This document shows, piece by piece, positions 10,626 to 63,786 of a stretch of DNA of 64,000 nt; position 1 is the first letter of the stretch, and the number at the start of each line of letters is the position of its first letter. Under the pieces are notes generated by a model that searched no databases, had not been told where the DNA came from, and saw only the letters and a list, made by a program, of their open reading frames with translations. This DNA comes from Leucoraja ocellata. Lineage: Eukaryota. The position numbers and the translations under genes are program-made. The stretch spans positions 3,906,001 through 3,970,000 of the forward strand of contig JAWMAR010000070.1 in the NCBI GenBank assembly GCA_036785375.1. Reading direction: 5' to 3'.

Positions 10626-11849
10626 CTGTTGGAACATGAAATAAAAGTCAGTTTCACTGCTTTTCACTTGCAGTTTAACAAGTAGCTATGATTTTCCGAT
10701 GCAAGCAGTTGATAGGCTTAACAGACAGGGCAATGCTTCTTCTGTGTGATTTGCAGCAAATGGGAGATGTTATCATGACAAACAGGAGTGCTGGTAACAA
10801 CTCTGGCTCCAGGTGTAGATGGCACGGTGGCGCAGCGGTAGAGTTGCTGCCTTACAGCCAGAGGCACGGGTTCGATCCTGACCACGGATGCTGTCTGCAC
10901 GGAATTTGTACCTCCTCCCTTTGACCGCGTGGGTTTCTACAAGTGCTCCAGTTACCCCACAGTCTGAACTCTTGCAAGTGTGTCGGTTAATTGGCTTCTG
11001 TAAATTTTCCCAAATGGAACTAGGATACTGGTGATTACTGGACGTTGTGTGCTCAGTGGGACGAAGAACCTGCTTCCACGATGTATCCACAAATTAATCA
11101 AAAGGGTCCAATTTCACTTGAGAGGAGTATTGCTTGGGATGAAACATTACAGTGATGGGGAGGGGTTGGATAGGCGTTTTATAAAATTCCATGCAGAACG
11201 GGTGAGGACGGGAGGATCTATTACAGGTGTGCAAAACTATGAGCAGCGTAGATAGGGTATTTTTGGAACATTTTACACGACAGATATGTGTAAAAGTGGA
11301 GAACATATGGGTACGTTAAGGAGCAGGATGTTTCAAGGGTATAAATAAATATTTTTAAACCGAGAAGATAGAGGTACCTGAATTGCCTCAATGGACGAGG
11401 TGCTGGTAAGTGGGATGAGTATTGATAGTACTGAATGGTCAACATTAATACAGTGACCCAAATGCGATACCGTCGTCTAGGAGTTAATTGTGGGCACATT
11501 TACTGATAATTTCTGATCCCTTCACATATTTGAGTGTCGGTCATGTGGAGATGATGGAAAGTGAAAATGCTTGGACTGATGTCACTACAAACCTAGTTTA
11601 AAGCTGTGTGAACATAAGAGGCAGTTCTAGCCGGGAAGCTGGTCTACACCAGCACTGGGAAATCTATTTATGGAGCCCAACAACCAAGTATTGACAAATG
11701 GGCCATAATTCCATCATGAATTATGGGGTGAAGAGGGGAAGATAGATCAGCCATGATTGAATGGTCTATTTCTGCTTCTATCACATGTGATTTTATGAAC
11801 CACCCCACCCCCACTTCCCCTTCTTCTCCCCATTCCCTCCACTACTTAC

Positions 11850-12170
11850 CAGTGCCGTTGATTTTCACCAGGAAACTACAGGGCGCGTCACTGCTGGAGA
11901 TGGACACGTTGACCATTTCACTGGATTTTGATCCATGTTGATTTGAGGCGGTGCAATAATATTGATGGTGCTGGTGTTTGAAGGATTGGCAATGTAGATC
12001 CAGGATATTGTTGTCTGAGATCTTTGAATCCCCAGATGGGGTCTTTTCATACCAGGTATAGCTAATGGGAAGGGATCCCCGGACCGACTCACAGGACACT
12101 GTCACTGAGCCCCCGAGACAATAGACATCGGCTGGTGACAGACACCCGAGCACAGGAACAGACACGGGTT
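11850..12170 (-). CDS. Gene B exon C2b: Fc-receptor-like C2-type Ig domain
   Basis: 321-bp open phase-1/1 exon; EPVSVPVL..GGSVTVSCESVRGSLPISYTW..YYCTASN..G|GTAAGT. Confidence 0.9.
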
Positions 12171-13052
12171 CTGTGGGAAAGGAGCAAACAGTCAGATACT
12201 GAGTGAACATCTGAAAATCAAACACTCGCCAATATCCACCATTTCTGGATCTTCGCCAGAGCCGCCAGGTTGGAATCGGACCCATCCATCTGCACGGAGT
12301 CATAGAGGCATATAGTGTAGAAGCAGGCCAACATGTCCATCCACACTAGTTCCACCTGCCCTTGCTTAGCCCATAAGCTTCCAAACGGAAGAGACCGTGC
12401 ATTTACTCGATCTATTCGTCGCATGATTTTGTAGCTGCCATAAGATCATCCCTCATCTTCCTGCTCTCCCAGAAATAAAGTCCTAGTCTGCTCAATCCCT
12501 CCCTGGAGTTCAGGCACTCAAGTCATGGCAGCATCCTTGTAAATCTTCTCTGCACCCAATCTTACTTGATAGCATCTTTCCTATAACATGGTGATGAATA
12601 CTGACCACAGAGCAGACATATCATGAGACAATCTTCGATTCTCTTTTCCATTACAGGAATTGCCAGCAGGAAAAAGGGAGCATTGTTTATTTAACTGTCG
12701 GACCCATCCCATCTACATAGATTCGTAGAGTCATACAGTAGAAACTTCGACCTAACTTGCCCGCGCTGACCAACACGCCCAATCTACACTAGTTCCACCT
12801 GTTCTTTCTTGGCCCTTAACCCTCTAAACATATCCTATTCATGTAACTGTCCAATATTTTCTGAAACGGTACGATAGTACCTGCCATAACTACTTCCGTC
12901 GGCAGTTCGTTCCATGGACCTACCAACCTTTGTGTAAACACGTTACTCGCCAGGTTCCTGTTAAATCATTCCCTCCTGATATTAAAACTATGTCCTCCGG
13001 TTCTCGATTCCCCTACTCTGGGCAAAAGACTGTGTATTTACTCGATCTATTC

Positions 13053-13937
13053 CTCGCGTGATTTTTGTGATTTTTGAAAAATATTAATAAATATTTTTAT
13101 TAGAATCAATGTACAGTAGTATAAACCGTGTTTTACATATTACATTTCGTGTACAACTTCTTGTTTTAAATTTATTAATAGAAAAGTAACAGAAGCATAA
13201 AAGAGGAGAGAGAAAGTTAAGTAAAGTAGTGATATTGATAGTTCGTGAAAGAATAGATAGAAAGAACCCGTAAAGATATAAAGCCGTAAAAAAAACGTGA
13301 ACCCCCCCCCCCCGAAAAATAAATACATAAATTAGTATTTTTATTATTTTTATTAGAATCAATGTACAGTAGTATAAACCGTGTTTTACATATTACATTT
13401 CGTGTACAACTTCTTGTTTTAAATTTATTAATAGAAAAGTAACAGAAGCAAAAAAGAGAAGGAGAGATAAAGTTAAGTAAAGTAAAGTTAGCGAAGGAAT
13501 AGATAGAACGAACCCGTAAAGATATAAAGCCGTAAAAAAACGTGAAACCCCCCCCGAAAAATAAATAAATTAATTAATAAAAACAAATAAAATATACAGA
13601 ATAAAATAAAATAATAAGAAAACAAAACAGAAAAAGAATAAAAGGGAGAAGGGATATGCCTGCTTCATGTCTTTCCACACCCCTCACCCAGATCTGAACA
13701 GTTAACATTTCAGACATGCTTGAAATCCACATTTGTTAGGTGGGAGTCTGGTGCACAGTTCTGGTCGCCGGGGGAGTTCGTTGTTCCAGAATTTGAGTAT
13801 ACGTTTTTTTGCTGTTATCAAGCCATGGTTAAGGAGAGAATTTTGGAACGAAATCAGCTTAGAGCCGGCTTCCATTGTTCCAAAAATAATCAATTCTGTG
13901 TTGGGGTCCAATTTTATTTTAAACTCGCATGATTTTT
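13053..13937 (-). mobile_element. L1-clade 3' fragment with about 14-bp TSD and internally duplicated 3' UTR
   Basis: IIFG...QNSLLNHGLITAKKRILKFW matches the L1 C-terminus at 42345-42848; CTCGCRTGATTTTT at 13053-13066 and 13924-13937; empty site in gene C near 31410. Confidence 0.75.
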
Positions 13938-14637
13938 TACCTGCAATAAAATCACCCCTCATCCTCCTGCGCTCCAAGGAATAAAGCCCTAATCTGCTCA
14001 ACCCCTCCCTGTATACCAGGCCCTCAAGTCATCGCAACATTCTTGTAAGTCATCTCTGCTCCTTCTCCTCACAATCAATTTACCAGATTTATACATCTCT
14101 TTGTCTCTCCACCCTCCCAGCCGCCAGAACTACCACGTCTGCCACTTTACCACTACCACTGCAGCACCATCTCTCTTTGTTTTACAATTCCAGCATCTGC
14201 AGTTAATCTTCTTTTAATCTGAAACTCTGCTTTTAATCTGAACATTCAAACGCCTCATTAGTACAACAGTATCAACAACTTTTTAATTTCCTTGCATAAA
14301 ATTGTTGATGGTGATACTGTTGCACTATTAAGGTGTGTGAATGGCGGTATTGTAGAATAGTGTGTAGGGAGCGAATGGGAAAGTGGAATAACATAGAACT
14401 AGTGTGACCGGTGATCGCTAGGTGGTGTGGACTCGGTGGGCCGAAGGATCCGTTTCCATGTTACATTTGTAAACTATTACTAAATATCCGGGCGAACATT
14501 TTTCTGTAAACTCTACAAACTGTTCACATATTTTGTTTTATAAAGCGGCGACCAGAACTGTGCACCAGACTCCCACCTAACAAATGTTTTGCCCGTTGCC
14601 AAAGTGGAGACATCAAGTCACTCACTGACAAACCTAC

Positions 14638-20885: not shown

Positions 20886-20887
<2 letters not shown>

Positions 20888-21226: not shown

Positions 21227-21489
21227 GACCCGTGTTTTTTTTTAATTATCAAATTATTTATTCAATTATTAAAAATAATATTTACACTACATAAAACGAG
21301 AACCCAGCACCATAATACAAGACAAACAAATATACTACATAAACTACTATACAACTATGTTACAATACTTGTCAAGGTGTATTCAACCACAGGCGGTGCC
21401 CAGATGTGCCGGAAATCCCCCAGGTGCCCGTGGACAGCGCCTGGTGCTTCTCGAGACCCACCCGGACGCGGGAAAGCCGACCCGTGTTT
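21227..21489 (-). mobile_element. Tx1-like 3' fragment with 11-bp TSD
   Basis: GACCCGTGTTT at 21227-21237 and 21479-21489. Confidence 0.7.
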
Positions 21490-29329: not shown

Positions 29330-29378
29330 CTTGCAGAGTAATTGGATGTTATCGAATTTTCACAAGAATATCCATGAC
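29330..29378 (-). CDS. Gene C stalk exon (GHGYSCENSITSNYSA)
   Basis: Intact 49-bp exon, phase 1 to 2. Confidence 0.78.
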
Positions 29379-32300
29379 CTGTTGGAACAAGGAAATAAAA
29401 ATTCAGTTTCACTGCTTTTTCACTTGCAGTTGAGCAAGGGAGGTATGATTTTTCCGATTTGCAGCAAATGGGAGATGTTGTCATGATAAGCAAGAATGCT
29501 TTTAACCACGTTGGCTCTGTAGACGGCACGGTGCCGCAGCGGTGGAGTTGCTGCCTTCCAGGGCCAGAGACCCAGGTTTGATCCTGACTACGGATGCTGC
29601 CTATACGGAATTTGTCCCTCCTACCTGTGATCGCGTGGGTTTCTTCAAGTGCTCCAGTTTCCCCCAGCGTTCCAAGTCGTGCATGTTTTGTAGGTTAATT
29701 GGCTTCTGTAAATATGTCCCCTATGGAACTAGTCTATTGGTGAATACTGGACTGTGTGCACTCAGTGGGCCGATGAGCCCTGTTTCAAACCTGTATCCAT
29801 AATGTAATCTAAAGAGTGCAATTCTCACTTGAGAGGAATATTGCTTGCGATGAAACATTACAGTTATGGGGAGGGGTTGGAAGGGGCTTTATAAAAGTCC
29901 ATGCAGAATAGGTGAGGAATGGGGAACCTATTACAGGTGGCAAAACTGTGAGCTGCAAAGATTGTATTTTTAGAAAAATTTGCACGGCAGACATGTGTAA
30001 ATGTGGAGAACATATGGTTAGGTTCAGGAGCAGGATGCTTCAAGGGTCTCAAGACATATTTTTAAACGCAGAAAATTGAGGTGCCTGAATTGTCACAATG
30101 GACGAGGTGCTGGTAAATGGGATTGTATCGAATGGTACTGAATGGTCAACATTAACACAGTGGGCCCAAATCTGATACCGTCCGTCCACGAGTTAACTGT
30201 GGCCACATTTACTGCTAGTTTCTGTTCCCTTCCCATATTTGAGTGTCGGTCATGTGGCGATGATGGTGGGAAAGTGAAAGTGCTTGGGCTGATGTCACTG
30301 CAAACCCAGTTTAAAGCAGTGTAAACATAAGAGGAAGTTTCTAGCCGAGAAGCCGGTCTACACCAGCACTGGGAAATCTATGTCTGGAGCCCAGCAAACA
30401 AGTATTGACAAATGGGCCATAATTCCTTCATTTAAATAACGTGCATGGATTTCAGGGCGTCGGGGGTTATGTGGCAAAGGCAGGAGAATGGGGTGAAGAG
30501 GGGGAGATAGATCAGCCATGAGTGAATGGTCTATTTCTGCTTCTATCACGTGATCTTATGAAACACCCCGCCCCCACTTTCCCCCTTCTTCCTCCTCATT
30601 CCCTCCACTACTTACCAGTGCCGTTGATTTTCACTAGGAAACTACAGGGCACGTCACTGCTGGAGATGGACACGTTGACCATTTCACTGGATTTGGATCC
30701 ATTATTATTTGAGGCTGTGCAAGAATATTGATGGTGCTGGTGTTTGAAGGATTGACAATGTAGATCCAGGGCATTGTTGTCTGAGATCTTTGAATCCCCA
30801 GATGGGGTCTGTTCATACCAGCTGTAGTTAATGGGAAGGGATCCCCGGACCGACCTCACAGGACACGGTCACTGAGCCCCCGAAACAGGAGACATCGGCT
30901 GGAAGGTGACAGAAATCCAAGCACAGGAGCAGACACGGGTTCTGTGGGAAAAAGAGCAAAACAGTCAGACACTGAGTGAACATCTGAAAATCGCCCAATA
31001 TCCGCCATCTCTGTATCTTAGCCAGACGCCAAGTTGGAATCTAACCCATCCATCTACATAGAGTCATAGAGTCATTGCAGCATAGAAACAGGCCCTTCGG
31101 TCTAACTTGCCCGCGCTGACCAACACGCCCAATCTGCACTAGTTCCACCTGCTCTTTCTTGGCCCTTAAATCCTCTAAACATATCATATTCAATATAACT
31201 GTCGAATATTTTCTTAAATGTTACGATAGTACCTGCCGAAAACTACTTCTGTCGGCAGTTCATGTCATGTACCTACCAACCTTTATGTAAAAACATTACT
31301 CCCCTAGGTTCTTGTTAAATCATTCCCCCCTCATATTAAACATATGTCCCTCCGGTTCTGGATTCCCCTACTCTGAGTAAAAGACTCTGTGTATTTACTC
31401 GATCTATTCCTCGCATAATGTTTTACCTGCATTCAGATCAACCCACATCCTGCTGCGCTCCAAGAAATAAAGCCCCAATCTGCTCAAACCCCCTCCCTGT
31501 ATGCCAGGCCCTCAAGTCATCGCAGCATCATTGTAAGTCTTCCCTGCTCATTTCTCCACACAATTTACCAGATTTAATTATCTCTGTGCCTCTCCATCTT
31601 CCCAGCTGCCAGAACTACCATGTCTGCCACTGTGCCAGGACACAGCAGCACCATCTCTCTTTGTTTTACAATTCCAGCATCTGCCGTTAATATGTTTTTA
31701 ATCTAAACCTCTGCCACAATTCTACAATATCAACATTCAAACACTTCATTAGTGCAACAGTATCACTATCAACAACTTTTTAATTTCCTTGCATAAAATA
31801 GTTGATAGTTGATACTGTTGCACTAATGAGGTGTCGTGAATGGCGGTATTGTAGAATTGTGTGCAGGGAGTGAATGGGGAAGTGGAATAACATAGAACTA
31901 GTGTGACCGGTGATCGCTAGTCGGTGTGAACTCGGTGGGCCGAAGGATCAGTTTCAATGTTACATTTGTAAACTATTACTAAATATTCCGGGTGAACACG
32001 TTTTCTGTAAACTCTACAAACCTTTCACATCTTTTGTTTTATAAAGCGGCGACCAGAACTGTGCACCAGACTCCCACCTAACAAATATTTTGCCCGTTGC
32101 CAAGGTGGAGACATCAAGTCACTCACTGAGAAACCTACCTTCAGATACTTGGAGATGTACTTTAAATGTTGGTTCGCCAGGTGTAGTAATTCCACATCTG
32201 TACCATCCTGTATCTCCAGAGTGAAGATCCTCCACAGTCACAGTAAATATTCCTCGTGCCGGGTTATCTGTGATTGACACTGTTCCGTTCTGTCCATGTT

Positions 32301-34439
32301 TCCCATTTGTTTCCACTATACGTGTACACTGGGCGACTCTTGTCTCACGACACCAGTATTTTGTGTGTGAGCGGTACACTGCTGCATAGTGACAATCGAT
32401 TGTGATCGCTCTTCCCACAACCCCTCGCACCTTCGCTCTCTGCCCACAGTGCACCTGAAAACTGAAGGAAAAATCTTTCATAAATTGAAGAGCAAAATTA
32501 GGCCTTTCACAAAACATATACATTAGAGTATAATGTACAGGGGAGTCTGCCCACTCAAATTCTTAACTCCTGTTGAATTCCACCTAGATTGCGATGAGAG
32601 ACAGATACTGTACACTGTCCCCTCACCATCTGCACAGGTCGTTCCAAAGCGCTTCCCAGCCAATGTGGGTGTGAATGGTGAAGGAAATGATGTATTGAAG
32701 ATGGGAGCCTGTTGCAATTGGAAGGCGCTGTCTAGGGGAGTCTTGGTCAGTTGCTGCAGTGCATCGTGCAGATGGTGCCAAACTGCTGCTGCTCTGTATC
32801 AGCGGGCGAGGTTGAGGATGGGGTGGTCTATCATGCGCGACACTAGATCATGACAAACCAAACACAAGTGTTCGACGAAAATTGTAGCCTAGGCCAGTGC
32901 TTCTTAAACTGATGAAATGGTTCACCCAAGGGCGAATAAAATTATTTTGGGGTAAATTAGTTAATTTTATGTTTTTTTCTCATGTGACAAAATCAATTAT
33001 CTATAAAATTATGCACAAGGGAAAATACGATGATAATAACCAAAAGAACATAAGAAACATTTAGTGGAGGGTGAAATTAAATCTTGTAATAAATACTCAA
33101 GAGTGAATGACACTGTAATAGTTTAAGAAGAACTGGCCTTGTATAAAATTGGTCTCGCTGATGTAAACCATTCACACCCTCTTCTGGACTTCCAATCTGA
33201 GCGTCTCCACGCCTACAGGAAGTTCTTTTCAAAATTATCTTTGACAAAAGTAAGGGTTATACTTGATGGAGTGACGGCCAAGTAGATTCAAATTTAATTT
33301 TGTGGAGATTACTGGAGTTTAACACAAATTAACAGAGTTAAAATCATGAACATGATCATGAAATTGTACATCCCTTGGTTATAACTGATGATGGATCCAA
33401 ACAGAATGAATTTGGTTTCTTTCTCTGTCTCAAAGTGCGGCAGCCAGAAAATAATTTTGATGGAATGCACTCAACCCGCAGGTATTTCTCTCATTTGCTG
33501 AACTTTCTCACCACCGCCCAGGTGAAAGCAACAGGCAATCATTTACCAGTCCCCCAAACAAACTCTCGCATTTTACACCATGAGCTCCCGGTGGCTGCAA
33601 TGATGCCGTCTGCAAATAACAAGAAATCCATGAACATCATCACAAGGTGAATAGCAGCAGGTTCAGGGGACACGAGAAGAACACACACCTGCATTGTTGA
33701 TTTCTGTCACATAACTGCACGTTCCTGCTCCTTTGAAGAACTTTTCACGTTGAGTATTTCACTGGATTTTGTCCCACGATTATTTGAGGCTGTGCAGTAA
33801 TATTGACGGTGTTGACCTTCGAGGATTTCACAACTCAGATCCAGTTGATTGCCAGAGACGATCGTTGAAACCCAATGCTCGTTCTTTTCAAACCATGTGT
33901 AATGGATGGGAAGGGATCCACGGACAAGACTCACACGACACTGACACTGAGCCTCCGAGATGTGAGGCATTTGCTGGTGACAGATATCTGAGCACAGGAG
34001 CAGACACGGGTTCTGTGGGAATGGAGCAAACATTCAGTCACCTGGATGAACAGTTAAAAACCAAACACGTGCTAAATCTCAGCAGCCCTTTATCTCAGCC
34101 GAACCGTCCGGTTGACATCTCACCGCTCATCTACATCTCTGTGAGTGTGCGAAGCTCAGAAACTGAAGGAAGGTTAGAGTTATAGAGAACCGAAAGATGC
34201 CCCATCACAACAGCTCATTCATGGCCGACCAACATGTCTTTCTGGACCATTTCCATATGTCCACGTTTCTCCCTTATCACTCGCAATGATCCCAATCTAC
34301 GCAAATATCAAAAAAATATTTTAAATGCTGCTATTCTAACTGCCTTAACACCCTTCCCCCTGCATGCAGGTTCCATATAAATATCACCCAATGTGTGGAA
34401 AATGTTGTCCCTCAGAACATATGTTGGGATGTTACGTCC

Positions 34440-35220
34440 CTTTAAGATAGACACAAAAATGCAGGAGTAACTCGGCGGATTAGGCAGCATCTTTCGAGAG
34501 AAGACGTAGGTGACGTTTCGAATCGTGACCCTTCTTCAGCCTGAGAACCATGAGAAAGGGAGACAGAAGAGAAATGGAAGGGTACGGTGTGAAAACAAGT
34601 GATCAAAGGTGAAAATGTTTTAAAAAATGTAGAATGGATCATTGTCAGCTGAAGGGAAGGCATAGAATCAGTAAAATATAATCTGGAGGGCAGTGAAAAT
34701 AATTGGAGGCTTCGGATGGGGCGGGATGGAGACAGGAGTAAAGCAAGGGTTACTTGAAGTTAGAGAAGTCAATATTCAAACCGCTGGGTTGTAAGCTGCC
34801 CAAGCGAAATATGACGGTACTGTTCCTCCAATTTGCTTTTGGCCTCACTCTGCAAGGGGAGGAGGTCCGGGGACAGAAAGATCAGTTTGGGGAATGGGAG
34901 GGGGAATAAAGGTGTTTTGCAATCGGGATGTAGCGTAGGCCGAGGAACACTGTGCGGAATTGTTCAGCGAAACGATCGCCGAGCCTGCGTTGGGTCTCCC
35001 ATCTACTGTATCCGCTTGTTCACACCTGGAACAACGGATATAGTAGAGGAGGTTAGAAGAGATGCAAAATGAACCTCTGACTCACCCGGAAATTACTGTT
35101 GGAACCTTGGACGGAGTAGAAGCGGGATATATAGGGGACTGGTGTTGCATCTCCTGCAGTTGTAGGGGAAGGTATCTGGGGGACGGGGTGGGAAAGGACG
35201 AGTTGACCAGTGAGTTGCGG
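34440..35220 (-). mobile_element. Penelope-like element remnant (longer than the gene B copy)
   Basis: Terminal-repeat sequence plus GIY-YIG-like region; gene B lacks about 410 bp of it. Confidence 0.6.
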
Positions 35221-36016
35221 AGTCTGTCGGGTTATTAGTTTGAGTCGGAATGCAAACCTCTGACAGGGTGACATTTCATGACCAGTTCAGAGGCAGGGAA
35301 ATGTGTTTGAGCATCCCACTTGAAGTGGGTGGCCGCTCAGTGGAACAGAAGCCCGCACTGGGTGAGAGCAACATGAGTGGGGGTTTCCCGACCCCCGCCC
35401 GTTCCCCGCAGGTCTCTGCACTGCTGCGGAGCCTCGGGATATCGGTGGCTGCCCTGACCCTTCCCGGAGGAGAACATAGATAAGGCATTTTCAGTGGAGA
35501 CGTCAAGGTCAATCGCTGCGAAACGTACCGTCAGATACTTGGAGATGTACGTTAAATATTGGACGGTCGCCAGGTGTAGTAATTCCACATCTGTACCATC
35601 CTGTATCCTCCAGAGTGAAGATCCTCCACAGTCACAGCAAATATTCTTAGTGCCGGTATATCTGTGATTGACACTCTTCCACTCCGTCCGTTTTGGCCAT
35701 TTTGTTTCCACTGAATCTGTACATGGGGCGATTCCTCCCACGGCACCAGTATTTTTGTGCGTGAGCGGTACTCTGCTGCATAGTGACAATCGATTGTGAT
35801 CGCTCTTCCCACAACCCCTCCTTACTTCCCTCCTCTGCCCACACTGCATCTGAAACTGAGGGGAGAAACTTTCAGATGGACCACAGATCAAACAACACTT
35901 GTTCCCTCACTGGGATTATTAGTTTGAGTCTGAATGCAAATTTCTGACGGGTGACATTTCATACAGTTCAGAGGAAGGGCAATGCGCTGAGTATTCCACT
36001 TGAAGTGAAAAGTGAA

Positions 36017-36439
36017 GTTAAATGCCACTTTTCAAGAAAGGAGCAAGAGAGAAAACGGGAAATTTACAGACCAGTTAGCCTGACTTCGGTGCGGGAAAGG
36101 TGCCGGAGTCAATTATTAAAGAGGTAATAATGGGGTATGTGAATAGCAGTAAAATAATTAGTCCAAGTCAGCATGGAATTATGAAAGGAAAATCATGCCT
36201 GAATAATCTTCTGGACATTTTTGAGGATGTGGCAAGTAAAAATGGACGAAGGTGCGCCAGTAAATGTAGTGTATCTAGACTTCAAGGAAATCCTTTGATA
36301 AGGTTCCGCACGGGAGACTGGTGACTAAATTGAGAGCGCAGGAAGGGTGTTGACGTGGATAGGAAATTGGTTGGCAGACAGGGAAGCAAAGAGTAGGGAA
36401 GTGAACGGGTCCTTTTCAGAATGGCGGGAAGTGGCGAGT
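36017..36439 (+). mobile_element. CR1 RT fragment (paralogous to 270-684)
   Basis: PESIIKEVIMG..SPSQHG.MKGKSCL. Confidence 0.85.
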
Positions 36440-37910
36440 CAGTGGAGACGACAAAGTCAATCGCTGCCGAAACGTACCGTCAGATACATGGAGTTCTACG
36501 GTAAACATTGGGAAGGCCGTTAGATGTTGTAATTCCACATCTGTACCAGCCTGTATCGCCAGAGAGAAGATCCTCCACAGTCCACAGTAAATATTCCTCG
36601 TACCCGGTTATCTGTGATTGAAACTCTGCCTCTCCTTCCGTGTTGCCCAATTGTTTCCACCATATCTGTACATTGGCGATTCTGCACACGGCACCAGTAT
36701 TTTGTGTGTGAGCGGTACTCTGCTGCATAGTGACAATCGATTGTAAACGCACATTCCTACAACTGCTCTTACATACGGTTCTCCCCACACTGCACCTGAA
36801 ACTGAAGGGGAGAAACTTTCAGAAGGAGAGCAAATGAACAGTTTAGTGGAAATAGATACCTTTTCAAGATTCCATGAAAGAAAACTTAAATAGTTCCATG
36901 ATGTGTCATATTGCTTCACGGCCAATGTCTCCTGCCTGAAGTGCAGGCAGTGCTGTTATTGTAACCATTGTGTCAGTGTTCTGTCCCCGGGTCAGTACAA
37001 TTAGGGTTCACTTCCCACTCCAGATCCCTGAGCAGAAACTGGGCTTGGGGATCGCAGTGCGGTACTGAGGGAGCGCGGCAGTGTTGCAGGAGCTGCCTTT
37101 CAACAATCCCAGGCGGTGCCCGGCCTCTCACCCCACAGAAAGACCCCACTTTGCTATTTCATTGGGCGGTGACAATTTCTTCACAGCAGTTATCAGGCAT
37201 CTGAATCATCCTACCACGCCCAGAGATCTGTCCCTGAACTCCCATCTACCTCTTTGACGACCCTCGGACCACCCTTGATCGGACTTTGCTGCCTTTACCT
37301 TACACTAAACGTGATTTATTTTTCATGTATCTATGGCACTGTAGGATAATCGATTGTAATCCCTGTATTGTCTTTTCTGCTGGAGACGTCAATCAATCGC
37401 TGCGAAACGTACCGTCAGATACTCCGAGATGAACGTTAATATTGGATGGTCGGCAGATGTTGTAATTCCACATCTGTACCAATCCTGTATCTCCATCCTG
37501 AAGATCGTCCCACAGTCACAGTAAATATTCCTCGTGCCGGGTTATCTGTGATTGACACTCTTTCCACTCCGTCCGTGTTGCTCATTTGTTTCCACCAAAA
37601 CTGTACATTGGAGACTCATCCCAACGGCACCAGTATTTTGTGTGTGAGCGGTACTCTGCTGCATAGTAACAATCGATTGTGGTCGCTGTTCCCACAACTC
37701 CTCTTACATCCCACTTTGCCCACACTGCACCTGAAACTGAGGGGGAGAAACTTTCAGATGGAGAGCAATGAACTGTTTAATGGAAATAGGATACATTTTG
37801 AAGATTACTTCGTCATATAAACGACTTCATCGCCTCCAATGCATTCAGAACTCTGCAGCCCGGATCATCACCCGCACCAGATCATCGGACCACATCACAC
37901 CCATCCTCAC

Positions 37911-38110
37911 NNNNNNNNNNNNNNNNNNNNNNNNNNNNNNNNNNNNNNNNNNNNNNNNNNNNNNNNNNNNNNNNNNNNNNNNNNNNNNNNNNNNNNNNNN
38001 NNNNNNNNNNNNNNNNNNNNNNNNNNNNNNNNNNNNNNNNNNNNNNNNNNNNNNNNNNNNNNNNNNNNNNNNNNNNNNNNNNNNNNNNNNNNNNNNNNNN
38101 NNNNNNNNNN
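37911..38110. other. Assembly gap (exactly 200 N, probably a placeholder) hiding the 5' ends of genes C and D
   Basis: N run; gene orientation switches across it. Confidence 1.
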
Positions 38111-55920: not shown

Positions 55921-56167
55921 AAACACGGGTCGGCTTTCCGCGTCCGGGTGGTACTAGAGAATGACTAGGCGCTGTCCACGGGCACCTGGGGGATTTCCGG
56001 GACATCTGGGCACCGCCTGGGGTTGAATTCATCCTTGACAAGTATAGTCGTTTATTTAGAATATTTGTTTGTCTTGTATTATGGTGTTCGGTTCTTGTTT
56101 TATTGTAGTGTAAATATTATTTTTAATAATTGAATAAATAATTAGATAATTTAAAAAAACACGGATC
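55921..56167 (+). mobile_element. Tx1-like 3' fragment with TSD
   Basis: AAACACGGGTC 55921-55931 and AAACACGGATC 56157-56167. Confidence 0.68.
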
Positions 56168-56580: not shown

Positions 56581-56901
56581 TTTCAGGTGCAGTGTGGGCA
56601 AAGAGGGAGGTAAGAGGAGTTGTGGGAAGAGCGATCACAATCGATTGTCACTATGCAGCAGAGTACCGCTCACACACAAAATACTGGTGCCGTGGGAGGA
56701 GTCTCCAATGCACAGTGTTGGTGGAAACAAATGAGCAACACGAACGGAATGGAAGAGTGTCAATCACAGATAACCCGGCACGAGGAATATTTACTGTGAC
56801 TGTGGACGATCTTCAGGATGGAGATACAGGATGGTACAGATGTGGAATTACAGCATCTGCCGACCATCCAATATTTAACGTTTATCTCGAAGTATCTGAC
56901 G
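56581..56901 (+). CDS. Gene E exon V1: CD300/pIgR-type Ig V domain
   Basis: 321-bp open phase-1/1 exon; KYWCRGRSLQC..ITASADHPIF. Confidence 0.92.
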
Positions 56902-57214
56902 GTACGTTTCGCAGCGATTGACTTGACGTCTCCAGCAGAAAGACAATACAGGATTACAATCTATCCTCTTACAGCACATAGATACATGAAAATTAAATAC
57001 CGTTTAGTGTAAGGTAAAGCCAGCAAAGTCCGATCAAGGGTAGTCCGAGGGTCGTCAAAGAGGTAGATGGGAGTTCAGGACAGATCTCTGGATGTGGTAG
57101 GATGATTCAGATGCCTGATAACAGCTGTGAAGAAATTGCTTCCGAATCTGGCGGTGTGCGATTTCACGCTCGTAACGCTCTCCGGTAAGGGACCTGGAGG
57201 CGGGTGGTGAGTGA

Positions 57215-58090
57215 GCGAGTGGTGAGTGGGCGAGTGGTTGTGCCAGTGGTCAGATGCGTGGCAGATGAAGTTTAATGTGGATAAATGTGAGGTTATCCAC
57301 TTTAGTAGCAAAAGCAGGAAGGCAGATTATTTTCTGGATGGTGTCAGGTTGGGGAAAGGAGAAGTACAATTAGATCTGGGTGGTCCTTGTTCATCACTCA
57401 CTGAAATAAAGCATGCAGGTGCAGCAGGCAGTGAAGAAAGCTAGTGGCATGTTGACCTTAATAACACGATGATTTGAGCACAGGAGCAAAATAGTCCTTC
57501 TGCTGTTGTACATGGCCACTGTGAGACCACACCTGGAATATTGGGTGCAGTTTTGAACTCCAAATTTGAGGAAGGACCTTCTTGCTATTGAGGGATATAA
57601 ACATATAAGATTATTAAGGGATTTGACACGCTAGAGGCAGGAAACAGTCTGAAGAAGGGTTTCGGCCCGAAATGTCGCATATTTCCTTCGCTCCATAGAT
57701 GCTGCTGCACCCGTTGAGTTTCCCCAGCATTTTTGTGTACCTAACATGTTTCCGATATTGGCGAGTCCAGAACCAGGGGGCCACAGATTAAGAATAATGG
57801 ATAGGCCATTTAGAACGGAGATGAGGAAAAACTTTTTCAACCAGAGAGTTGTGAATCTGTGGAATTTTCTGCCTCAGACGGCAGTGGAAGCCGATTCACT
57901 GGGTGCATACTTTTGAGTTAGATAGAGCTATTTGGGCTGGCGGAATCAAGGGATATGGGGAAAGGCAGGAACGGGGTACTGATTGTGGATGATCAGCCAT
58001 GATCACATAGAATGGCGGTGCTGGCTGGAAGTGCTGAATGGCATACTCCTGCACCTATTGTCTACGCATCTATGTATCTATGTATGTATC
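57215..58090 (+). mobile_element. Degraded CR1 3' fragment with a nested Penelope-type short repeat (57646-57742)
   Basis: WQMKFNVDKCEVIHF motif, CR1 3' UTR and TATG tail. Confidence 0.8.
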
Positions 58091-58570
58091 TACAGTTCCA
58101 TGTGTCTCCAACTCTCATATGGAAAAGTAAGGCCAATCAAAACTTGAGCAACAGAACATTACACCCGTGAGAGAAACTGGGCGCAGTGGTTTCCTGATGA
58201 CTGTTTTCGGGTGTTACTTTTGTATTTGAACTGAACGCTACAGTTGTTAACGACTCGCGAATAGATTCAGATTCTGTTGAGAAAAGGAAATAAAAGTCAA
58301 TTAAAGATAGACAAAAAAAAAGCTGGAGTAACTCAGCGGGACAGGCAGCATCTCTGGAGAGAAGGAATGGGTGAAGTTTCGGGTCTGAGCATGGGTCTCG
58401 GCCCTAAACGTCAGGTAGGGAGAGTTAGATGCAACTCCAAATGATAGCGGCGCTAGGGGGTATATGGTAAGTTAGGAACGGGGTACTGATTGTGGATGAT
58501 CAGCCATGACCATAGTGAATGTCGGTGCTGGTTCGAAGGGCCGAATGGCCTACTCCTGCACCTATGGTCT

Positions 58571-58680
58571 CTTATCTTTTGATCTGCTTTATTGTAACCC
58601 GTCCGTCCTCTGTCCTCAGTCAGGGCGTTGTAAAGGCGGTGAATGTCTAAACACGGGTCCGGCCCAGTGTCGGTTGAGAG
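58571..58680 (+). repeat. 110-bp direct repeat, left copy
   Basis: Matches 59955-60064 with 4 mismatches. Confidence 0.92.
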
Positions 58681-59044
58681 CCTGAAGCATGACTTGAGTG
58701 CCTGAACTCCAGGGAGGGATTGAGCAGACTAGGACTTTATTTCTGGGAGAGCAGGAGGATGAGGGATGATCTTACGGCAGCTACAAAATCACGCGACGAA
58801 TAGATCGAGTAAATGCACAGTCTCTTCCGTTTGGAAGCTTATGGGCTAAGCAAGGGCAGGTGGAACTAGTGTGGATGGACATGTTGGCCTGCTTCTACAC
58901 TATATGCCTCTATGACTCTAAGTAGATGGATGGATCAGATTCCAACCAGGCAGCTGTGGCGAAGATACAGAGATGGTGGATATTGGCGAGTGTTTGATTT
59001 TCAGATGTTCACTCAGTGTCTGACTGTTTGCTCCTTTCCCACAG

Positions 59045-59365
59045 AACCCGTGTCTGTTCCTGTGCTTGGGTTTCTGTCACCAGCCAATGTCTCTTGTCTC
59101 GGGGGCTCAGTGACAGTGTCCTGTGAGTCGGTCTGGGGATCCCTTCCCATTAACTACAGCTGGTATGAAAAGACCCCATCTGGGGATTCAAAGATCTCAG
59201 ACAACAATGCCCTGGATCTACATTGTCAATCCTTCAAACACCAGCACCATCAATATTATTGCACAGCCTCAAATCAACATGGATCAAAATCCAGTGAAAT
59301 GGTCAACATGTCCATCTTCAGCAGTGACGTGCCCTGCAGTTTCCTGGTGAAAATCAACGGCACTG
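59045..59365 (+). CDS. Gene E inserted C2b-type Ig exon
   Basis: 321-bp open phase-1/1 exon closely similar to 11850-12170 and 30616-30941. Confidence 0.9.
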
Positions 59366-59954
59366 GTAAGTAGTGGAGGGAATGGGGAGAAGAAGAGGAA
59401 GTGGGGGCGGGGTGGTTCATAGGATAGCGGCAGAAATAGACCATTCAATCATGGCTGGTGTATCTTCCCCTCTTCTCCCCATTCTCCTGCCTTCTCCCCA
59501 TAACCCCCGACACCCTGAAATCCATGCACGTTATTTAATTACGTTATCAAGATTAAAATGATGGCATTATGGCCCATTTGTCAATACTTGGTTGCTGGGC
59601 TCCATAAATAGATTTCCCAGTGCTGGTGTAGACCGGCTTCCCGGCTAGAACTGCCTCTTATGTTCACACAGCTTTAAACTAGGTTTGCAGTGACATCAGT
59701 CCAAGCATTTTCACTTTCCATCATCTCCACATGACCGACACTCAAATATGTGAAGGGATCAGAAATTATCAGTAAATGTGGCCACAATTAACTCCTAGAC
59801 GACGGTATCAGATTTGGTCTACTGTGTTAATGTTGACCATTCAGTACAATCAATACTCATCCCACTTACCAGCACCTCGTCCATTGAGGCAATTCAAGTA
59901 CCTCTATCTTCTCGGTTTAAAAATATTTATTTATACCCTTCAAACATCCTGCTC

Positions 59955-60064
59955 CTTATCTTTTGATCCGCTTTATTGTAACCGGTCCGTCCACTGTCCT
60001 CAGTCAGGGCGTTGTAAAGGCGGTGAATATCTAAACACGGGTCCGGCCCAGTGTCGGTTGAGAG
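59955..60064 (+). repeat. 110-bp direct repeat, right copy
   Basis: Matches 58571-58680. Confidence 0.92.
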
Positions 60065-60460
60065 AAGAATGTTGGCAGCGCAGCCGGCGGCACCGCCAAT
60101 TAAATAGCAAAGTGGGTCTTTCTGTGGGGTGAGAGGCCGGGCACCGCCTGGGATTGTTGAAAGGCAGCTCCTGCAACACAGCCGCGCTCCCTCAGTACCG
60201 AATTGCGATTCCAGCCCAGTTTCTGCTCTGGGATCTGGAGTGGGAAGTGAACCCAAATTGTACTGACCCGGGGACAGAACACTGACACAACTGGTACAAT
60301 AACAGCACCGCCTGCACTTCAGACCGGAGACATTGGGCGTGAAGCAATATGACACATCATGGAACGTTTATGTTTTCTTTCATGTGATCTTCGAAATGTA
60401 TCTATTTCCATTTTACAGTTCATTTGCTCTCCATCTAAAAGTTTTTCCCCTCCATTTCAG

Positions 60461-60775
60461 TTGCAGTTTGGGGGAAGAAGAATGTAACAGGAGATGTGGG
60501 AAGAGCGATCACAATCGATTGTCACTATGCAACAGAGTACAGCTCACACACAAAATACTAGTGCCGTGGGTGGAGTCGCCAATGTACAGATATGGTGGAA
60601 ACTAATGGGCAACACGGACGGAGTGGAAGAGTATCAATCACAGATATACCGGCACTAAGAATATTTACTGTGACTGTGGAGGATCTTCACTCTGGAGATA
60701 CAGGAAGATACATCTGTGGAATTAGAACATCTGCCGCCCATCCAATGTTTTCCCTACATCTCCAAGTATCTGACG
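60461..60775 (+). pseudogene. Gene E V3-position exon with nonsense codon at the invariant Trp
   Basis: KY-TAG-C at 60559-60561 (TGG in all other V exons); distal acceptor CTCAG changed to CTCCA; 315 bp otherwise in frame. Confidence 0.88.
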
Positions 60776-61929
60776 GTACGTTTCGTAGCGATGGACTTGA
60801 CGTCTCCACTGAAATGCTTGATCCATGTTTTCTCCGGGAAGGGTCAGGGCAACACCGATATCCCGAGGCTCCGCAGCAGTGCAGAGACCTGCGGGGAGCG
60901 GGCGGGGGTCGGGAAACCCCACTCATGTTGCTCTCACCCGGTGCGGGCTCTGTCCCACTGAGCGGCCACCCACTTCAAGTGGGATGCTCAGCACATTTCC
61001 CTGCGTCTGAACTGTATGAAATGTCACCCTGTCAGAGGTTTGCATTCCCGCTCAAACTAATAACCCGAGAGATCAGTGAGAGACAAGTGTTGCTCACGGT
61101 CTGAATACCCGGAGAATAATAAACAGGGAATCCGGCCCCAGAGCTCAACAGACTGCGTTCAGTCCACCCGGGGCAGGTCAGCCCCCTGGTCCGACGCTGC
61201 CTGGACAGGACGTGATTGACGCAGGGAGCGATTGGACAAACTCAGACTTCATTCCTTGGTGTGGAAATGATTGAGCGAGGAGCCTATAGAAATGTATCAA
61301 TCACGAGAAGCATGCTCATTTTCCCACGATGTGTGGAATCAAAAAGTGGAGGACGGACGCAATGGGAACTATTTAAAGAGGGGTGGGGGGGGGGGGGGGG
61401 GGGTAGTAAGCTGTCACTTACTGTAATGGCATGTTTTGTACAGGTGAGTGGCCGAAGCTGAACACAATTCGCCCAAGTTCCACCTCAACAACATATGTAC
61501 AACTGAAACATAACATCCCAACTTCTGTTCTGATGGACAACATTGTCCACACATTGGGTGATATTTATATGGAACCTGCTGCCAGAGGAAGTTGTTGAGG
61601 CAGTTAGAAGAACAGCATTTAAAATATTTCTTTGATATTTGCGTAGATTGGGATCATTGCGAGTGATAAGGGAGAAACGTGGACATATGGCTATGGACTA
61701 GAAAGACATGTTGGTCGGCATGAATGAGCTGTTGTGATGGGCATCTTTCGGTTCTCTATAACTCTAACCTTCTTCGGTTTCTGGGCTTCGCACACTCACA
61801 GAGATGTAGATGAGCCGGTGAGATATCAACCGGACGGTTCGGGCTGAGATAAAGGGCTGATGAGATTTAGCATGTGTTTGGTTTTTAACTTTTCATACAG
61901 GTGACTGAATGTTTGCTCCATTCCCACAG

Positions 61930-62250
61930 AACCCGTGTCTGCTCCTGTGCTCAGATATCTGTCACCAGCAAATGCCTCACGTCTAGGAGGCTCAGTGTCA
62001 GTGTCGTGTGAGTCTGTCCGTGGATCCCTTCCCATCCGTTACACATGGTTTGAGAAGAACGAGCATTGGGTTTCAACTACCGTGTATGGCAATCAACTGG
62101 ATCTGAGTTGTGAAATCCTCGCCGGCCAACACCGTCAATATTACTGCACAGCCTCAAATAATCATGGGACAAAATCCAGTGAAAGTCTCAACGTGAAAGT
62201 CTTCAAAGGAGCAGGAACGTGCAGTTATGTGACAGAAATCAACAATGCAG
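61930..62250 (+). CDS. Gene E exon C2a: Fc-receptor-like C2-type Ig domain
   Basis: 321-bp open phase-1/1 exon, paralogue of 16154-16474. Confidence 0.9.
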
Positions 62251-63468: not shown

Positions 63469-63786
63469 TTTCAGGTGCACTGCGGGCAGAGAGCGAAGTA
63501 CACGGGGTTGTGGGAAGAGCGATCACAATCGATTGTCACTATGCAGCAGTGTACCGCTCACACACAAAATACTGGTGCAACGGGACAAGTCGCCAGTGTA
63601 CACATGCAGTGGAAACAAATGGGGAACATGGACAGAGTGGAAGAGTGTCAATGTCAGATAACCCGGCACGAGGAATATTTACTGTGACTGTGGAGGATCT
63701 TAACTCTGGAGATACAGGATGGTACAGCTGTGGAATTACTACACCTGGCGAACCAACATTTAAAGTATATCTCCAAGTATCTGAAG
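63469..63786 (+). CDS. Gene E exon V4: CD300/pIgR-type Ig V domain
   Basis: 318-bp open phase-1/1 exon; KYWCNGTSRQC..ITTPGEPTF; gene continues past the window end. Confidence 0.92.

What the first reader, a model, noticed from the sequence alone, without database searches (positions are those of the whole stretch)
58571..60064. Exon shuffling footprint: C2 exon cassette inserted between 110-bp direct repeats
Seen: 58681-59954 (1274 bp) is a copy of the membrane-proximal C2b exon with both intron flanks (homologous to 11317-12527). It sits in gene E where B has V2. It is bracketed by 110-bp direct repeats of the local pre-V intron sequence (58571-58680 and 59955-60064, 4 mismatches), with CTTA microhomology at the right junction and about 7 nt of filler at the left. 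There is no poly-A and no terminal inverted repeat. The exon is intact and phase 1-1, so it changes the receptor architecture in frame. Inference: DNA-level templated insertion with a long target duplication (replication template switching or break repair) is a mechanism for generating new domain orders. The repeats would also allow precise loss of the cassette by recombination.
Basis: partly seen in the sequence, partly recalled or inferred. Interest (0 to 1): 0.82.

Follow-up and report, generated by a model that had tools for sequence, protein, structure and literature searches.

The report
Ig exon copied into paralog's intron
A 1.27-kb piece of DNA carrying one complete immunoglobulin-domain exon was copied from one skate immune-receptor gene into an intron of a neighbouring gene, duplicating 110 bases of the target, which gives a clean natural example of how exon shuffling changes the domain order of a protein.

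Summary
58571-58680 and 59955-60064 are direct repeats, 106 of 110 identical. They bracket a 1274-nt segment that is 94-96.5% identical, in reverse orientation, to 11317-12527 of gene B. The exon 59045-59365 is open, phase 1-1, with AG and GT splice signals.

B and pseudogene C stay colinear beyond both cassette ends, so gene E is the recipient. The repeat includes the last 14 nt of an older LINE block. It therefore arose locally, not from an old module duplication.

The junctions show 4-nt CTTA microhomology and a 7-8-nt filler. There is no poly-A and no terminal inverted repeat. Best reading: one DNA-level templated insertion with target duplication, by template switching or by a staggered break with fill-in and capture.

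New here:
- A Leucoraja erinacea protein model (XP_055510906.1) has exactly V1-C2b-V-C2a-V4, 509 of 528 residues identical to E's exons, so the cassette is spliced in frame there.
- In this window the next V exon carries an in-frame TAG.

Reads could not test the junctions. The scan's unchecked note s1-884924 reports the same structure 541 kb away.

It is a known kind of event, but an unusually clean case.

The parts
56587..56901 (+). Gene E, V1 exon (V-set Ig, phase 1-1, open)
   Evidence: Splice signals read. Pfam V-set E=3e-14. 99 of 105 residues identical to XP_055510906.1 residues 15-119.
57195..58584 (+). Block of interspersed repeats in the V1-to-V intron. It includes a LINE 3' fragment (57245-58074) and a second LINE 3' tail (58422-58570). 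Its last 14 nt (58571-58584) are the start of repeat copy 1.
   Evidence: Many dispersed copies in the window and very high read depth. Paralog introns are contiguous across this point. LINE tail consensus (loose ends at 58565).
58571..58680 (+). Direct repeat copy 1 (target duplication, left)
   Evidence: 106 of 110 identical to 59955-60064. Positions 58585-58680 are homologous to the pre-V1 introns of A, B and E.
58681..58688 (+). Left junction filler (7-8 nt matching neither target nor donor)
   Evidence: No significant template was found: short-word matches are at the chance level.
58688..59958 (+). Copied segment: 5' intron flank, C2b exon and 3' intron flank. The last 4 nt (CTTA, 59955-59958) are shared with the target.
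   Evidence: 94-96.5% identical to 12527-11317 on the minus strand. Three-way alignment with B and C: 23 E-only, 32 B-only and 118 C-only substitutions among 1187 sites.
59045..59365 (+). C2b-type Ig exon of the cassette (321 nt, phase 1-1, open, consensus-like splice sites)
   Evidence: Pfam Ig_3 28.3 bits and Ig_2 24.8 bits, both just under the gathering scores. 105 of 107 residues identical to residues 120-226 of XP_055510906.1. Falls inside the skate membrane-proximal C2b clade (100/97) and pairs with that protein's cassette (95/86).
59955..60064 (+). Direct repeat copy 2 (target duplication, right), continuous with the rest of the pre-V intron (60065-60460)
   Evidence: 60033-60383 is 94% identical to B's pre-V1 intron 21237-20886.
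60461..60775 (+). Gene E, next V exon: a V2/V3 mosaic with an in-frame TAG at 60559-60561 in place of the conserved Trp
   Evidence: The L. erinacea protein has Trp at this position; 99 of 104 residues are identical.
61930..62250 (+). Gene E, C2a exon (open, phase 1-1)
   Evidence: Pfam Ig_C17orf99 31.8 bits and Ig_2 28 bits. 105 of 108 residues identical to XP_055510906.1.
63475..63786 (+). Gene E, V4 exon (open). The gene runs off the window.
   Evidence: 101 of 104 residues identical to XP_055510906.1.
11317..12527 (-). Donor-type segment in gene B (C2b exon 11850-12170 with both intron flanks). B's homology with gene C continues beyond both ends.
   Evidence: B lacks about 70 nt that E (59488-59557) and C retain, so present-day B is not the exact donor state.

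Best explanation
Gene E belongs to a skate cluster of MDIR-type receptors, built from CD300/pIgR-like V domains and C2 domains. In the germline of an ancestor, a break or a stalled fork arose in the intron between E's V1 exon and its next V exon, at the edge of an old LINE insertion. It was resolved by copying about 1.27 kb from a paralogous gene. The donor was of the B type, that is the membrane-proximal C2b exon with about 355 nt of upstream and about 590 nt of downstream intron.

Synthesis entered the donor after a few untemplated letters. It returned to E through a 4-nt microhomology (CTTA) 110 nt behind the point of departure, so 110 nt of target now flank the insert.

The same product arises in two ways. 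One is replicative template switching (FoSTeS/MMBIR type). The other is two nicks 110 nt apart giving long overhangs that were filled in, with a copied fragment captured between them (SDSA or end joining). The sequence cannot separate these two.

The exon and the recipient intron are both phase 1, and the exon keeps its own splice sites. It can therefore be spliced in frame, changing V-V-... into V-C2-V-C2-V-(C2).

Shown: the structure, the polarity (E is the recipient), the junction features, and the in-frame product in a public protein model. Inferred: the molecular pathway, germline timing, and function.
For: Repeats and cassette are as described.

Polarity:
- B 12528-12556 still matches C 31521-31547 and B's own upstream copy 14033-14062 beyond the cassette's left end.
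- B and C remain aligned below 11317/30026 beyond its right end.
- E diverges into the repeat at both ends.

Local origin of the repeat:
- Its first 14 nt are the end of the TE block, which the paralog introns lack.
- Both copies lack the ~230-nt insert present in the pre-V1 introns of A, B and E.

Dating: the repeats differ at 4 of 110 sites (3.6%). Cassette against B differs at 55 of 1187 sites (4.6%), split 23 on E and 32 on B with C as outgroup.

Junctions: CTTA microhomology (chance of 4 or more nt is 0.016) and a 7-8-nt filler. No poly-A and no TIR.

Not a misassembly of B reads: the cassette differs from B by about 5% and by three indels, and E keeps about 70 nt that B has lost.

Independent occurrence of the exon order: XP_055510906.1 (L. 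erinacea) has V1-C2b-V2/3-C2a-V4. It is 509 of 528 residues identical to E's five exons and has Trp where the window has TAG, so it is encoded by other DNA than this window.

Domain type: the cassette groups with skate membrane-proximal C2b domains, not with C2a.

Known mechanisms giving such products:
- Repair-mediated capture of nearby DNA with microhomology and filler, including whole exons with intron flanks (PMC2671141, abstract and passages).
- Fill-in of staggered 3' overhangs giving duplications (PMC8355091, abstract and passages).
- MMBIR-type insertions flanked by duplicated host DNA (PMC7470373, passages).
Against: - No read-level confirmation. The one read-laying run was swamped by interspersed repeats, and none of the 24 listed contig pieces bridges 58680/58681 or 59954/59955.
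- The 110-nt duplication is far longer than the 4-21-nt target duplications tabulated for repair-mediated duplications. The insert (1.27 kb) exceeds their 619-bp maximum for closely linked donors (PMC2671141).
- The visible donor-type copy is 46 kb away and inverted.
- The true donor is not identified. Present B has a deletion that E lacks. At protein level the nearest terminal C2b is that of another L. erinacea model, with weak support of 82/74. E's own terminal C2b lies beyond the window.
- The left junction is ambiguous: either a 7-8-nt filler, or a 4-nt insertion plus 3-nt microhomology.
- The exon shows no sign of purifying selection (E versus B: 5 synonymous and 11 nonsynonymous differences).
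- This window's copy has a stop codon in the next exon.
Confidence: 0.8

Rival explanations
1. Old architecture plus homogenisation. E inherited a V-C2-V order, which is the common alternating pattern of the family. Gene conversion from a B-type C2b module then made exon and flanks look young. On this view the repeats are leftovers of ordinary tandem module duplication.
For: Alternating V-C2 order dominates among homologues in sharks, rays and sawfish, and occurs in skates. Mosaic identity along the cluster genes shows frequent exchange. B against C drops from 93% to about 83% at 13924. E's V exon is a V2/V3 mosaic. B's V1 is flanked by 295-nt repeats at 95% while the V1 and V2 exons are only 86.5% alike.
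Against: - Conversion needs flanking homology, yet both cassette ends are abrupt, with filler or 4-nt microhomology.
- Repeat copy 1 lies upstream of the C2 exon, where a V-C2 unit model predicts no pre-V sequence.
- Both repeat copies carry the 14-nt end of a TE block. A module duplication would then have carried LINE sequence to the left of copy 2, but cassette sequence colinear with B and C lies there.
- 110 nt at 96% is an independent young date that matches the cassette's.
- Among the 64 proteins returned with the V1-C2b-V-C2a query, only the L. erinacea model exceeds 71% identity. No Amblyraja or Rhinoraja model has this order with a C2b-type second domain.
Confidence: 0.08
2. Retro-element-mediated insertion. 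A LINE reverse transcriptase copied a fragment of unspliced pre-mRNA of a C2b-bearing gene into a nick beside the resident LINE tail, and an unusually long target-site duplication resulted.
For: The cassette is in sense orientation. It is flanked by a target duplication, and the left repeat starts at a LINE 3' tail.
Against: - No poly-A and no LINE-type tail repeat at the cassette's 3' end.
- The segment begins and ends in mid-intron and keeps both introns' flanks.
- The resident LINE lies outside the duplicated pair, on the wrong side for its own target duplication.
- 110 nt is far above the 4-21 nt listed for retro-insertions in PMC2671141.
- LINEs of this tail type are thought to need their own 3' end for priming. 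This point is recalled and comes from no call.
Confidence: 0.05
3. Assembly artefact. A chimeric join in a repetitive gene cluster placed a B-like C2b segment inside E's intron.
For: The window has three N gaps, and gene C is full of 1-nt indels, so local assembly quality is uneven. No contig or read bridging the junctions was seen. The contigs laid on repeat copy 2 in runs X1, X3 and X9 carry the letters of copy 1 at 59984, 59993 and 60029.
Against: - The cassette is not identical to any other sequence in the window. It differs from B by about 5% and by indels.
- The two repeats differ at 4 sites, and the path returns precisely to the same intron.
- A public protein model, encoded by different DNA (19 of 528 residues differ, no stop), has the same exon order.
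- An unchecked first-stage note reports the same structure 541 kb away (s1-884924).
Confidence: 0.03
4. Capture and movement by a DNA transposon or Helitron-like element.
For: A gene fragment with intron flanks has been moved and is flanked by direct repeats.
Against: There are no terminal inverted repeats: 152 of 500 shuffles reach the observed score. No element sequence lies between the repeats and the gene fragment. The 110-nt duplication is far longer than transposase-made ones; that comparison is recalled. Only one such copy exists in the window.
Confidence: 0.02

Closest known systems
[quoted passage not shown]
   Same: A copy of unique genomic DNA is inserted at a break while the donor is retained. 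Junctions carry microhomology and filler, and there is no poly-A. In that paper's set, two duplicated segments were a full exon with both intron flanks (its Table 2), and one exon was inserted into an intron of its own gene at about 94% identity without evidence of constraint.
   Different: Here the insert is 1.27 kb (their maximum for linked events is 619 bp). The target duplication is 110 nt (theirs 4-21 nt). The visible donor-type copy is 46 kb away in another gene. The exon is in sense orientation and in matching phase, and it appears in an annotated coding sequence.
FoSTeS/MMBIR template-switch rearrangements. Zhang et al. 2009 was seen only as a reference and in one passage of PMC2926785. 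MMBIR-type insertions flanked by duplicated host DNA are described in PMC7470373 (passages).
   Same: A templated stretch from elsewhere is joined through microhomology, and the return lands behind the departure point so that target sequence is duplicated on both sides of the insert.
   Different: Those cases are somatic or pathogenic and often involve kilobases to hundreds of kilobases of duplication. This is a small, evolutionarily retained germline event. Replication dependence cannot be tested from sequence.
Tandem duplications from fill-in of staggered breaks with 3' overhangs (Schimmel et al. 2021, PMC8355091; abstract and passages)
   Same: Two nicks on opposite strands, fill-in of both overhangs and end joining duplicate the stretch between the nicks. 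This would account for the 110-nt repeat.
   Different: The experimental overhangs were about 43 nt and the products were plain tandem duplications. Here a 1.27-kb copied fragment lies between the two copies.
Classical exon shuffling by insertion of a symmetrical phase 1-1 module into a phase-1 intron. This is Patthy's rule, recalled. PMC2926785 (abstract and passages) estimates that such intronic insertions account for under 10% of domain gains in animals.
   Same: A complete Ig domain is encoded by one exon flanked by phase-1 introns and inserted into a phase-1 intron of another gene, giving a new domain order in frame.
   Different: Most documented cases are ancient, with the junctions erased. 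Here both junctions, the donor-type copy and the target duplication are still readable. Donor and recipient are paralogs, so no new domain type is gained.
Modular domain immune-type receptors (MDIR) of the clearnose skate. The Cannon et al. 2006 paper is recalled and not held. The family is mentioned in PMC3031540 (passages). MDIR3 is ABC86797.1 and MDIR5 is ABC86800.1.
   Same: The same gene family. MDIR3 and MDIR5 were returned among the 52 proteins at E<=1e-20 when the C2b domain of a L. erinacea cluster protein was the query. Their terminal C2 domains are 85-86% identical to the cassette exon. The V domains are CD300/pIgR-like V-set. Domain number and order vary between members.
   Different: As far as the passages I read go, the published description is of cDNAs and domain subfamilies. 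The DNA-level event that moves a domain is what is added here.

Membership tests
Repair-mediated / templated insertional duplication | The inserted sequence is a copy of single-copy genomic DNA whose source type is retained elsewhere | tested here: met
   94-96.5% match to 11317-12527, and a second, older copy in gene C
Repair-mediated / templated insertional duplication | Junctions with microhomology and/or filler and without extended homology | tested here: met
   CTTA at the right junction and a 7-8-nt filler at the left. The flanks are unrelated beyond these.
Repair-mediated / templated insertional duplication | Size and target-site changes in the published range (insert up to 619 bp for linked donors; TSD 4-21 nt) | tested here: not met
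   The insert is 1274 nt and the target duplication 110 nt (against PMC2671141)
FoSTeS/MMBIR template switching | Microhomology at each switch point | tested here: inconclusive
   4 nt at the right switch. At the left there is either none (filler) or 3 nt after a 4-nt insertion.
FoSTeS/MMBIR template switching | Arises during replication or break-induced replication | not testable with these tools
   The sequence alone does not record the process
LINE-mediated retroposition | Poly-A or element 3' tail at the 3' junction, and a spliced (intronless) copy | tested here: not met
   No A-run or tail repeat. Both intron flanks and both splice sites are retained.
DNA transposon / Helitron gene capture | Terminal inverted repeats or element termini, and a short fixed-length target duplication | tested here: not met
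   The TIR score is no better than shuffles (152 of 500 reach it). The duplication is 110 nt.
Exon shuffling by intronic insertion of a symmetrical module | The exon encodes a whole domain and is flanked by introns of the same phase as the recipient intron | tested here: met
   The 321-nt exon is phase 1-1. Neighbouring V exons are also phase 1-1. Ig-domain Pfam matches lie just below the gathering score. It falls in the skate C2b clade.
Exon shuffling by intronic insertion of a symmetrical module | The inserted exon is spliced into the recipient's mRNA | tested here: inconclusive
   The NCBI protein model XP_055510906.1 includes it in frame, but I could not see what supports that model. The one RNA run laid gave 0-2 reads per bin on E's exons at 90% likeness, and these cannot be assigned to E.
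MDIR receptor family | Sequence relationship to the described clearnose-skate MDIR proteins, with V-set domains of CD300/pIgR type combined with C2-type domains | tested here: met
   MDIR3 and MDIR5 are among the 52 proteins at E<=1e-20, with C2b domains 85-86% identical to the cassette. V-set and Ig_2/Ig_C17orf99 matches.
MDIR receptor family | Transmembrane region with a charged residue, or a cytoplasmic ITIM | not tested
   Gene E runs off the window after V4. The first-stage note s1-885531 on the C-termini was not checked.

The most novel reading that the evidence does not exclude
The event is not a one-off. Breaks at TE edges in the pre-V introns of this cluster may be resolved again and again by copying a neighbouring Ig exon, so that illegitimate templated insertion, rather than unequal crossing-over, would be the main generator of the family's varied domain orders. 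Three hints point this way. B's own C2b module is preceded by a breakpoint with about 144 nt of unplaced sequence and a partial duplicate of its intron. Identity between genes changes abruptly along their length. A second locus with 110-nt repeats around a C2 exon was noted 541 kb away (s1-884924, unchecked), though it may equally be a later segmental copy of this same event.
Probability: 0.12. Interest if true: 0.7.

Novelty: new member of a known kind. Interest (0 to 1): 0.5.

Why it matters
Exon shuffling is the textbook explanation for modular proteins. Yet recent natural cases are few in which the donor type, both junctions and the footprint at the target can still be read. Large surveys rate intronic exon insertion as a minor route (PMC2926785).

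This locus shows the step directly:
- a whole Ig-domain exon with its own splice sites is copied into a same-phase intron of a paralog;
- the mechanism is homology-independent and leaves microhomology, filler and a 110-nt target duplication;
- the resulting V-C2-V-C2-V order appears in an annotated coding sequence of the little skate.

It gives the "modular" MDIR family a concrete DNA mechanism. It also offers a PCR-testable presence/absence marker among skates.

Tried and rejected
Reads. No run holds more than 0.45 of the sampled words. The single read-laying run covered 5901 letters, three contig runs and one RNA run, at 90% likeness. It was dominated by the interspersed repeats at 56.9-58.7 kb and 59.45-59.65 kb. 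The 24 listed pieces are 111-398 letters long and none bridges a junction. No joint or loose end at 58680 or 59955 was among the rows shown, but thousands of rows were not shown. The junctions are therefore neither supported nor contradicted. The RNA run gave 0-2 reads per bin on E's exons and none on 59652-61227. I draw nothing from this.

Filler origin. Words of 7-9 nt from the filler occur elsewhere at about the number expected by chance: 14 eight-letter hits against about 14 expected by my own estimate. Two hits lie near cassette ends in paralogs, but they were noticed after the fact. I do not claim a templated filler.

Terminal inverted repeats and poly-A: none.

Other bracketed exons. 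The only other close direct repeats are the 295-nt pre-V1/pre-V2 intron pair in B, with its counterpart in A, and a 101-nt pair in B. They belong to tandem V modules and do not bracket a foreign exon.

Donor identity. B is the best match in the window but not the exact donor state. The protein tree does not resolve the donor. E's own terminal C2b is outside the window. In the L. erinacea model that domain pairs with the model's third C2b (89/86) and not with the cassette.

The repeats at that locus, and empty sites in other species, could therefore not be examined.

Papers. One search for the phrase 'modular domain immune-type receptor' found one paper. One search for MDIR, skate and immunoglobulin superfamily listed 12 of 38 papers, and only that same paper uses MDIR. 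I therefore found no paper in the held library describing DNA-level junctions of domain exchange in MDIR genes. The original MDIR paper is not held. Zhang et al. 2009 (PMC4461229) is not held. Supplementary files were not consulted. Those of PMC2671141 list individual events and may include larger target duplications than its Table 1.

Exons were translated and searched one by one, and the long query for searches was a database protein.
Full report
**What is there.** The window holds a cluster of Ig-superfamily receptor genes built from V-set exons and C2-type exons (stop-to-stop frames; Pfam).
- Gene B lies on the minus strand and reads V1-V2-V3-C2a-V4-C2b.
- Gene C, also on the minus strand, is a decayed copy of B.
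- Gene E lies on the plus strand, from about 54.4 kb to the window's end.
- E's exons are V1 (56587-56901), the cassette exon (59045-59365), a further V exon (60461-60775), C2a (61930-62250) and V4 (63475-63786).

**The observation.**
- 58571-58680 and 59955-60064 are direct repeats with 4 mismatches in 110.
- The 1274 nt between them match gene B's C2b exon and both its intron flanks in reverse orientation. The match is 93.8% over 805 columns and 96.5% over 401 columns.
- In the whole window only four direct-repeat pairs of this kind exist (at least 40 nt, at least 90% identity, under 6 kb apart). The others belong to tandem V modules.

**Who gave and who received.**
- At the cassette's right end, B and C go on matching each other below 11317 and 30026, while E turns into repeat copy 2.
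- At the left end, B's sequence still matches C (31521-31547) and B's own upstream duplicate (14033-14062) for 29 nt beyond the point where the match with E stops.
- E therefore holds a sub-segment of a longer ancestral arrangement and is the recipient.
- The cassette has the short form of the upstream intron, which it shares only with the copy next to B's C2b exon. C and B's upstream duplicate have a long form.
- With C as outgroup, 23 substitutions are private to E's cassette, 32 to B and 118 to C, among 1187 sites present in all three.
- B has lost about 70 nt that E and C keep. The donor was therefore an ancestor of B or a close relative not in the window.
- A tree of C2 domains puts the cassette inside the clade of skate membrane-proximal C2b domains (100/97), apart from C2a (100/100), but does not resolve the donor.

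**Where the repeat comes from.**
- Positions 58585-58680 are homologous to the intron upstream of V1 in genes A, B and E.
- In those three introns a piece of about 230 nt is present, with an A-rich end and an 11-13-nt flanking duplication. Both repeat copies lack it.
- The first 14 nt of the repeat are not in the paralog introns. They are the last letters of a 1.39-kb block of interspersed repeats (57195-58584) that interrupts E's intron exactly where the paralog introns are contiguous.
- That block ends in a LINE 3' tail (tail consensus also from the loose ends at 58565). Calling this LINE CR1-like rests on my recall of its 8-nt tail repeat.
- Both repeat copies therefore descend from one sequence that already had the TE block beside it. 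The duplication is local and later than the TE insertion.
- The repeat divergence (4 of 110, 3.6%) fits the cassette-versus-B divergence (55 of 1187, 4.6%), as one event predicts.

**Junctions.**
- Right: the donor type ends in CTTA and the target begins with CTTA. The chance of 4 or more nt of overlap is 0.016.
- Left: repeat copy 1 ends at 58680 and the donor match starts at 58688/58689. The 7-8 letters between match neither side.
- Read another way, the repeat continues for 7 more letters (6 of them matching) after a 4-nt insertion, the last three being shared with the donor.
- I found no significant template for the filler.
- There is no poly-A, no LINE tail at the cassette's 3' end and no terminal inverted repeat.

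**Mechanism.** These features are those of homology-independent, templated repair. A 3' end left the target, copied 1.27 kb from a paralog and came back through microhomology 110 nt upstream of where it left. This is a template-switch reading. Alternatively, two nicks 110 nt apart gave overhangs that were filled in, and a copied fragment was captured between the ends.

Each element has precedent in papers I read in part:
- Capture of nearby chromosomal DNA at breaks, with microhomology and filler, including whole exons with intron flanks (PMC2671141).
- Fill-in of staggered 3' overhangs producing duplications (PMC8355091).
- MMBIR-type insertions flanked by duplicated host DNA (PMC7470373).

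The insert and the duplication here are larger than the ranges tabulated in PMC2671141. The sequence cannot tell the two routes apart.

**Consequence for the gene.**
- The exon is intact, begins after AG and ends before GTAAGT. It is phase 1-1 like the V exons around it, so inclusion keeps the frame.
- E versus B in the exon shows 16 differences, 5 synonymous and 11 nonsynonymous. That is no fewer than in the introns, so there is no sign of constraint.
- In this window the next V exon is a mosaic of V2-like upstream and V3-like downstream sequence. It has TAG at 60559-60561 where every other V exon has the conserved Trp codon.
- This copy of E is thus either a pseudogene or must skip that exon. 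Skipping would also keep the frame.

**A second, coding copy.** I searched the protein collections exon by exon and then with a database protein as the long query. This returned XP_055510906.1 of Leucoraja erinacea, named there 'Fc receptor-like protein 5', 1078 aa.
- Its first five domains are V1-C2b-V-C2a-V4.
- They match E's five exons at 99/105, 105/107, 99/104, 105/108 and 101/104 residues, 509 of 528 in all.
- The second domain shares three of the four amino-acid changes private to E's cassette.
- The third domain has Trp where the window has the stop.
- The model then runs on into a C2b and what looks like a second gene, and has no membrane anchor, so it is imperfect. I could not see what evidence supports it.
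- It is nevertheless encoded by DNA other than this window. It shows the same exon order with the cassette spliced in frame.
- Among the 64 proteins returned when its first 440 residues were the query, no other exceeds 71% identity. No Amblyraja, Rhinoraja or Rostroraja protein has a C2b-type domain after V1 followed by V-C2a. This fits a lineage-restricted event but does not prove it.
- Whether this protein comes from an orthologous locus in another genome, or from the second locus that a first-stage note places 541 kb away in this genome (s1-884924, title only, unchecked), I cannot tell.

**Family and context.** The genes belong to the MDIR family. MDIR3 and MDIR5 of the clearnose skate are among the hits, and their terminal C2 domains are 85-86% identical to the cassette. 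The family is mentioned in PMC3031540; the original description is recalled, not read.

In sharks, rays and sawfish the homologues mostly alternate V and C2. The insertion therefore gives E an order (V-C2-V-C2-V-...) that is common in the family rather than new to it. The other half, that the repeats be explained by ordinary module duplication, is not met, for the reasons given above.

**What could not be done.**
- Read support. No listed piece bridges a junction.
- The contigs laid on repeat copy 2 in three runs carry copy 1's letters at three of the four differing sites. This may mean only that copy 1 contigs were laid twice.
The species of the window is therefore left at 'a skate close to or identical with L. 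erinacea'.

**Verdict.** This is a real, well-preserved exon-shuffling event by templated, microhomology-mediated insertion with a 110-nt target duplication. The kind of mechanism is known. The case is unusually complete and is tied to an annotated product.

Noticed in passing
window 12557-14062 (gene B, minus strand): The intron upstream of B's C2b exon holds a partial duplicate of itself (copy 1 at 14062..12698, long form; copy 2 at 12556..12328, short form). The two are separated by about 144 nt that match nothing else convincingly. Copy 1 is interrupted by a satellite-like block (13067-13924, with two ~245-nt repeats at 89%). This looks like another homology-independent rearrangement scar next to a C2b module.
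   Followed up: partly
window 9882-16890 versus 28574-34431: Identity between genes B and C drops from 93% (13924-16890) to 82-86% (9882-13066). The C2b end of one of them appears to have a different origin from its V4-C2a part, so the cluster genes are mosaics.
   Followed up: no
window 30611-37806 (gene C): C's V1, V2, V3 and C2b exons carry many 1-nt indels, mostly in short homopolymer runs, plus a 4-nt insertion in C2b. It is either a decayed pseudogene or a poorly polished stretch next to the N gap at 37911-38110.
   Followed up: partly
window 21238-21478; also about 3123-3363 and 55932-56156: A piece of about 225-240 nt, with an A-rich 3' end and an 11-13-nt flanking direct repeat, sits in the pre-V1 introns of genes B, A and E. 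It looks like a SINE-type insertion. The homologous site in E's second V module (inside the 110-nt repeat) is empty.
   Followed up: partly
window 19290-19582 and 20886-21179 (also 1137-1408 and 2804-3064): 295-nt direct repeats at 95% flank B's V1 exon, although the V1 and V2 exons are only about 86.5% alike. The intron may have been homogenised between tandem V modules, or partly re-duplicated.
   Followed up: no
window 60559-60561: An in-frame TAG replaces the conserved Trp codon of E's V2/V3 mosaic exon. The L. erinacea protein XP_055510906.1 has Trp there.
   Followed up: yes
window 20659-20967: A long AAT/ATT-type microsatellite lies just upstream of B's pre-V1 intron. It reads as a poly-Asn/poly-Leu open frame in the mechanical ORF list.
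   Followed up: no
protein P0154 (XP_055510906.1), residues 650-1078: The public gene model continues from the first C2b into a second V-C2a-V-C2b set and ends without a transmembrane region. It probably fuses two neighbouring genes. P0003 and P0005 look like similar fusions.
   Followed up: partly
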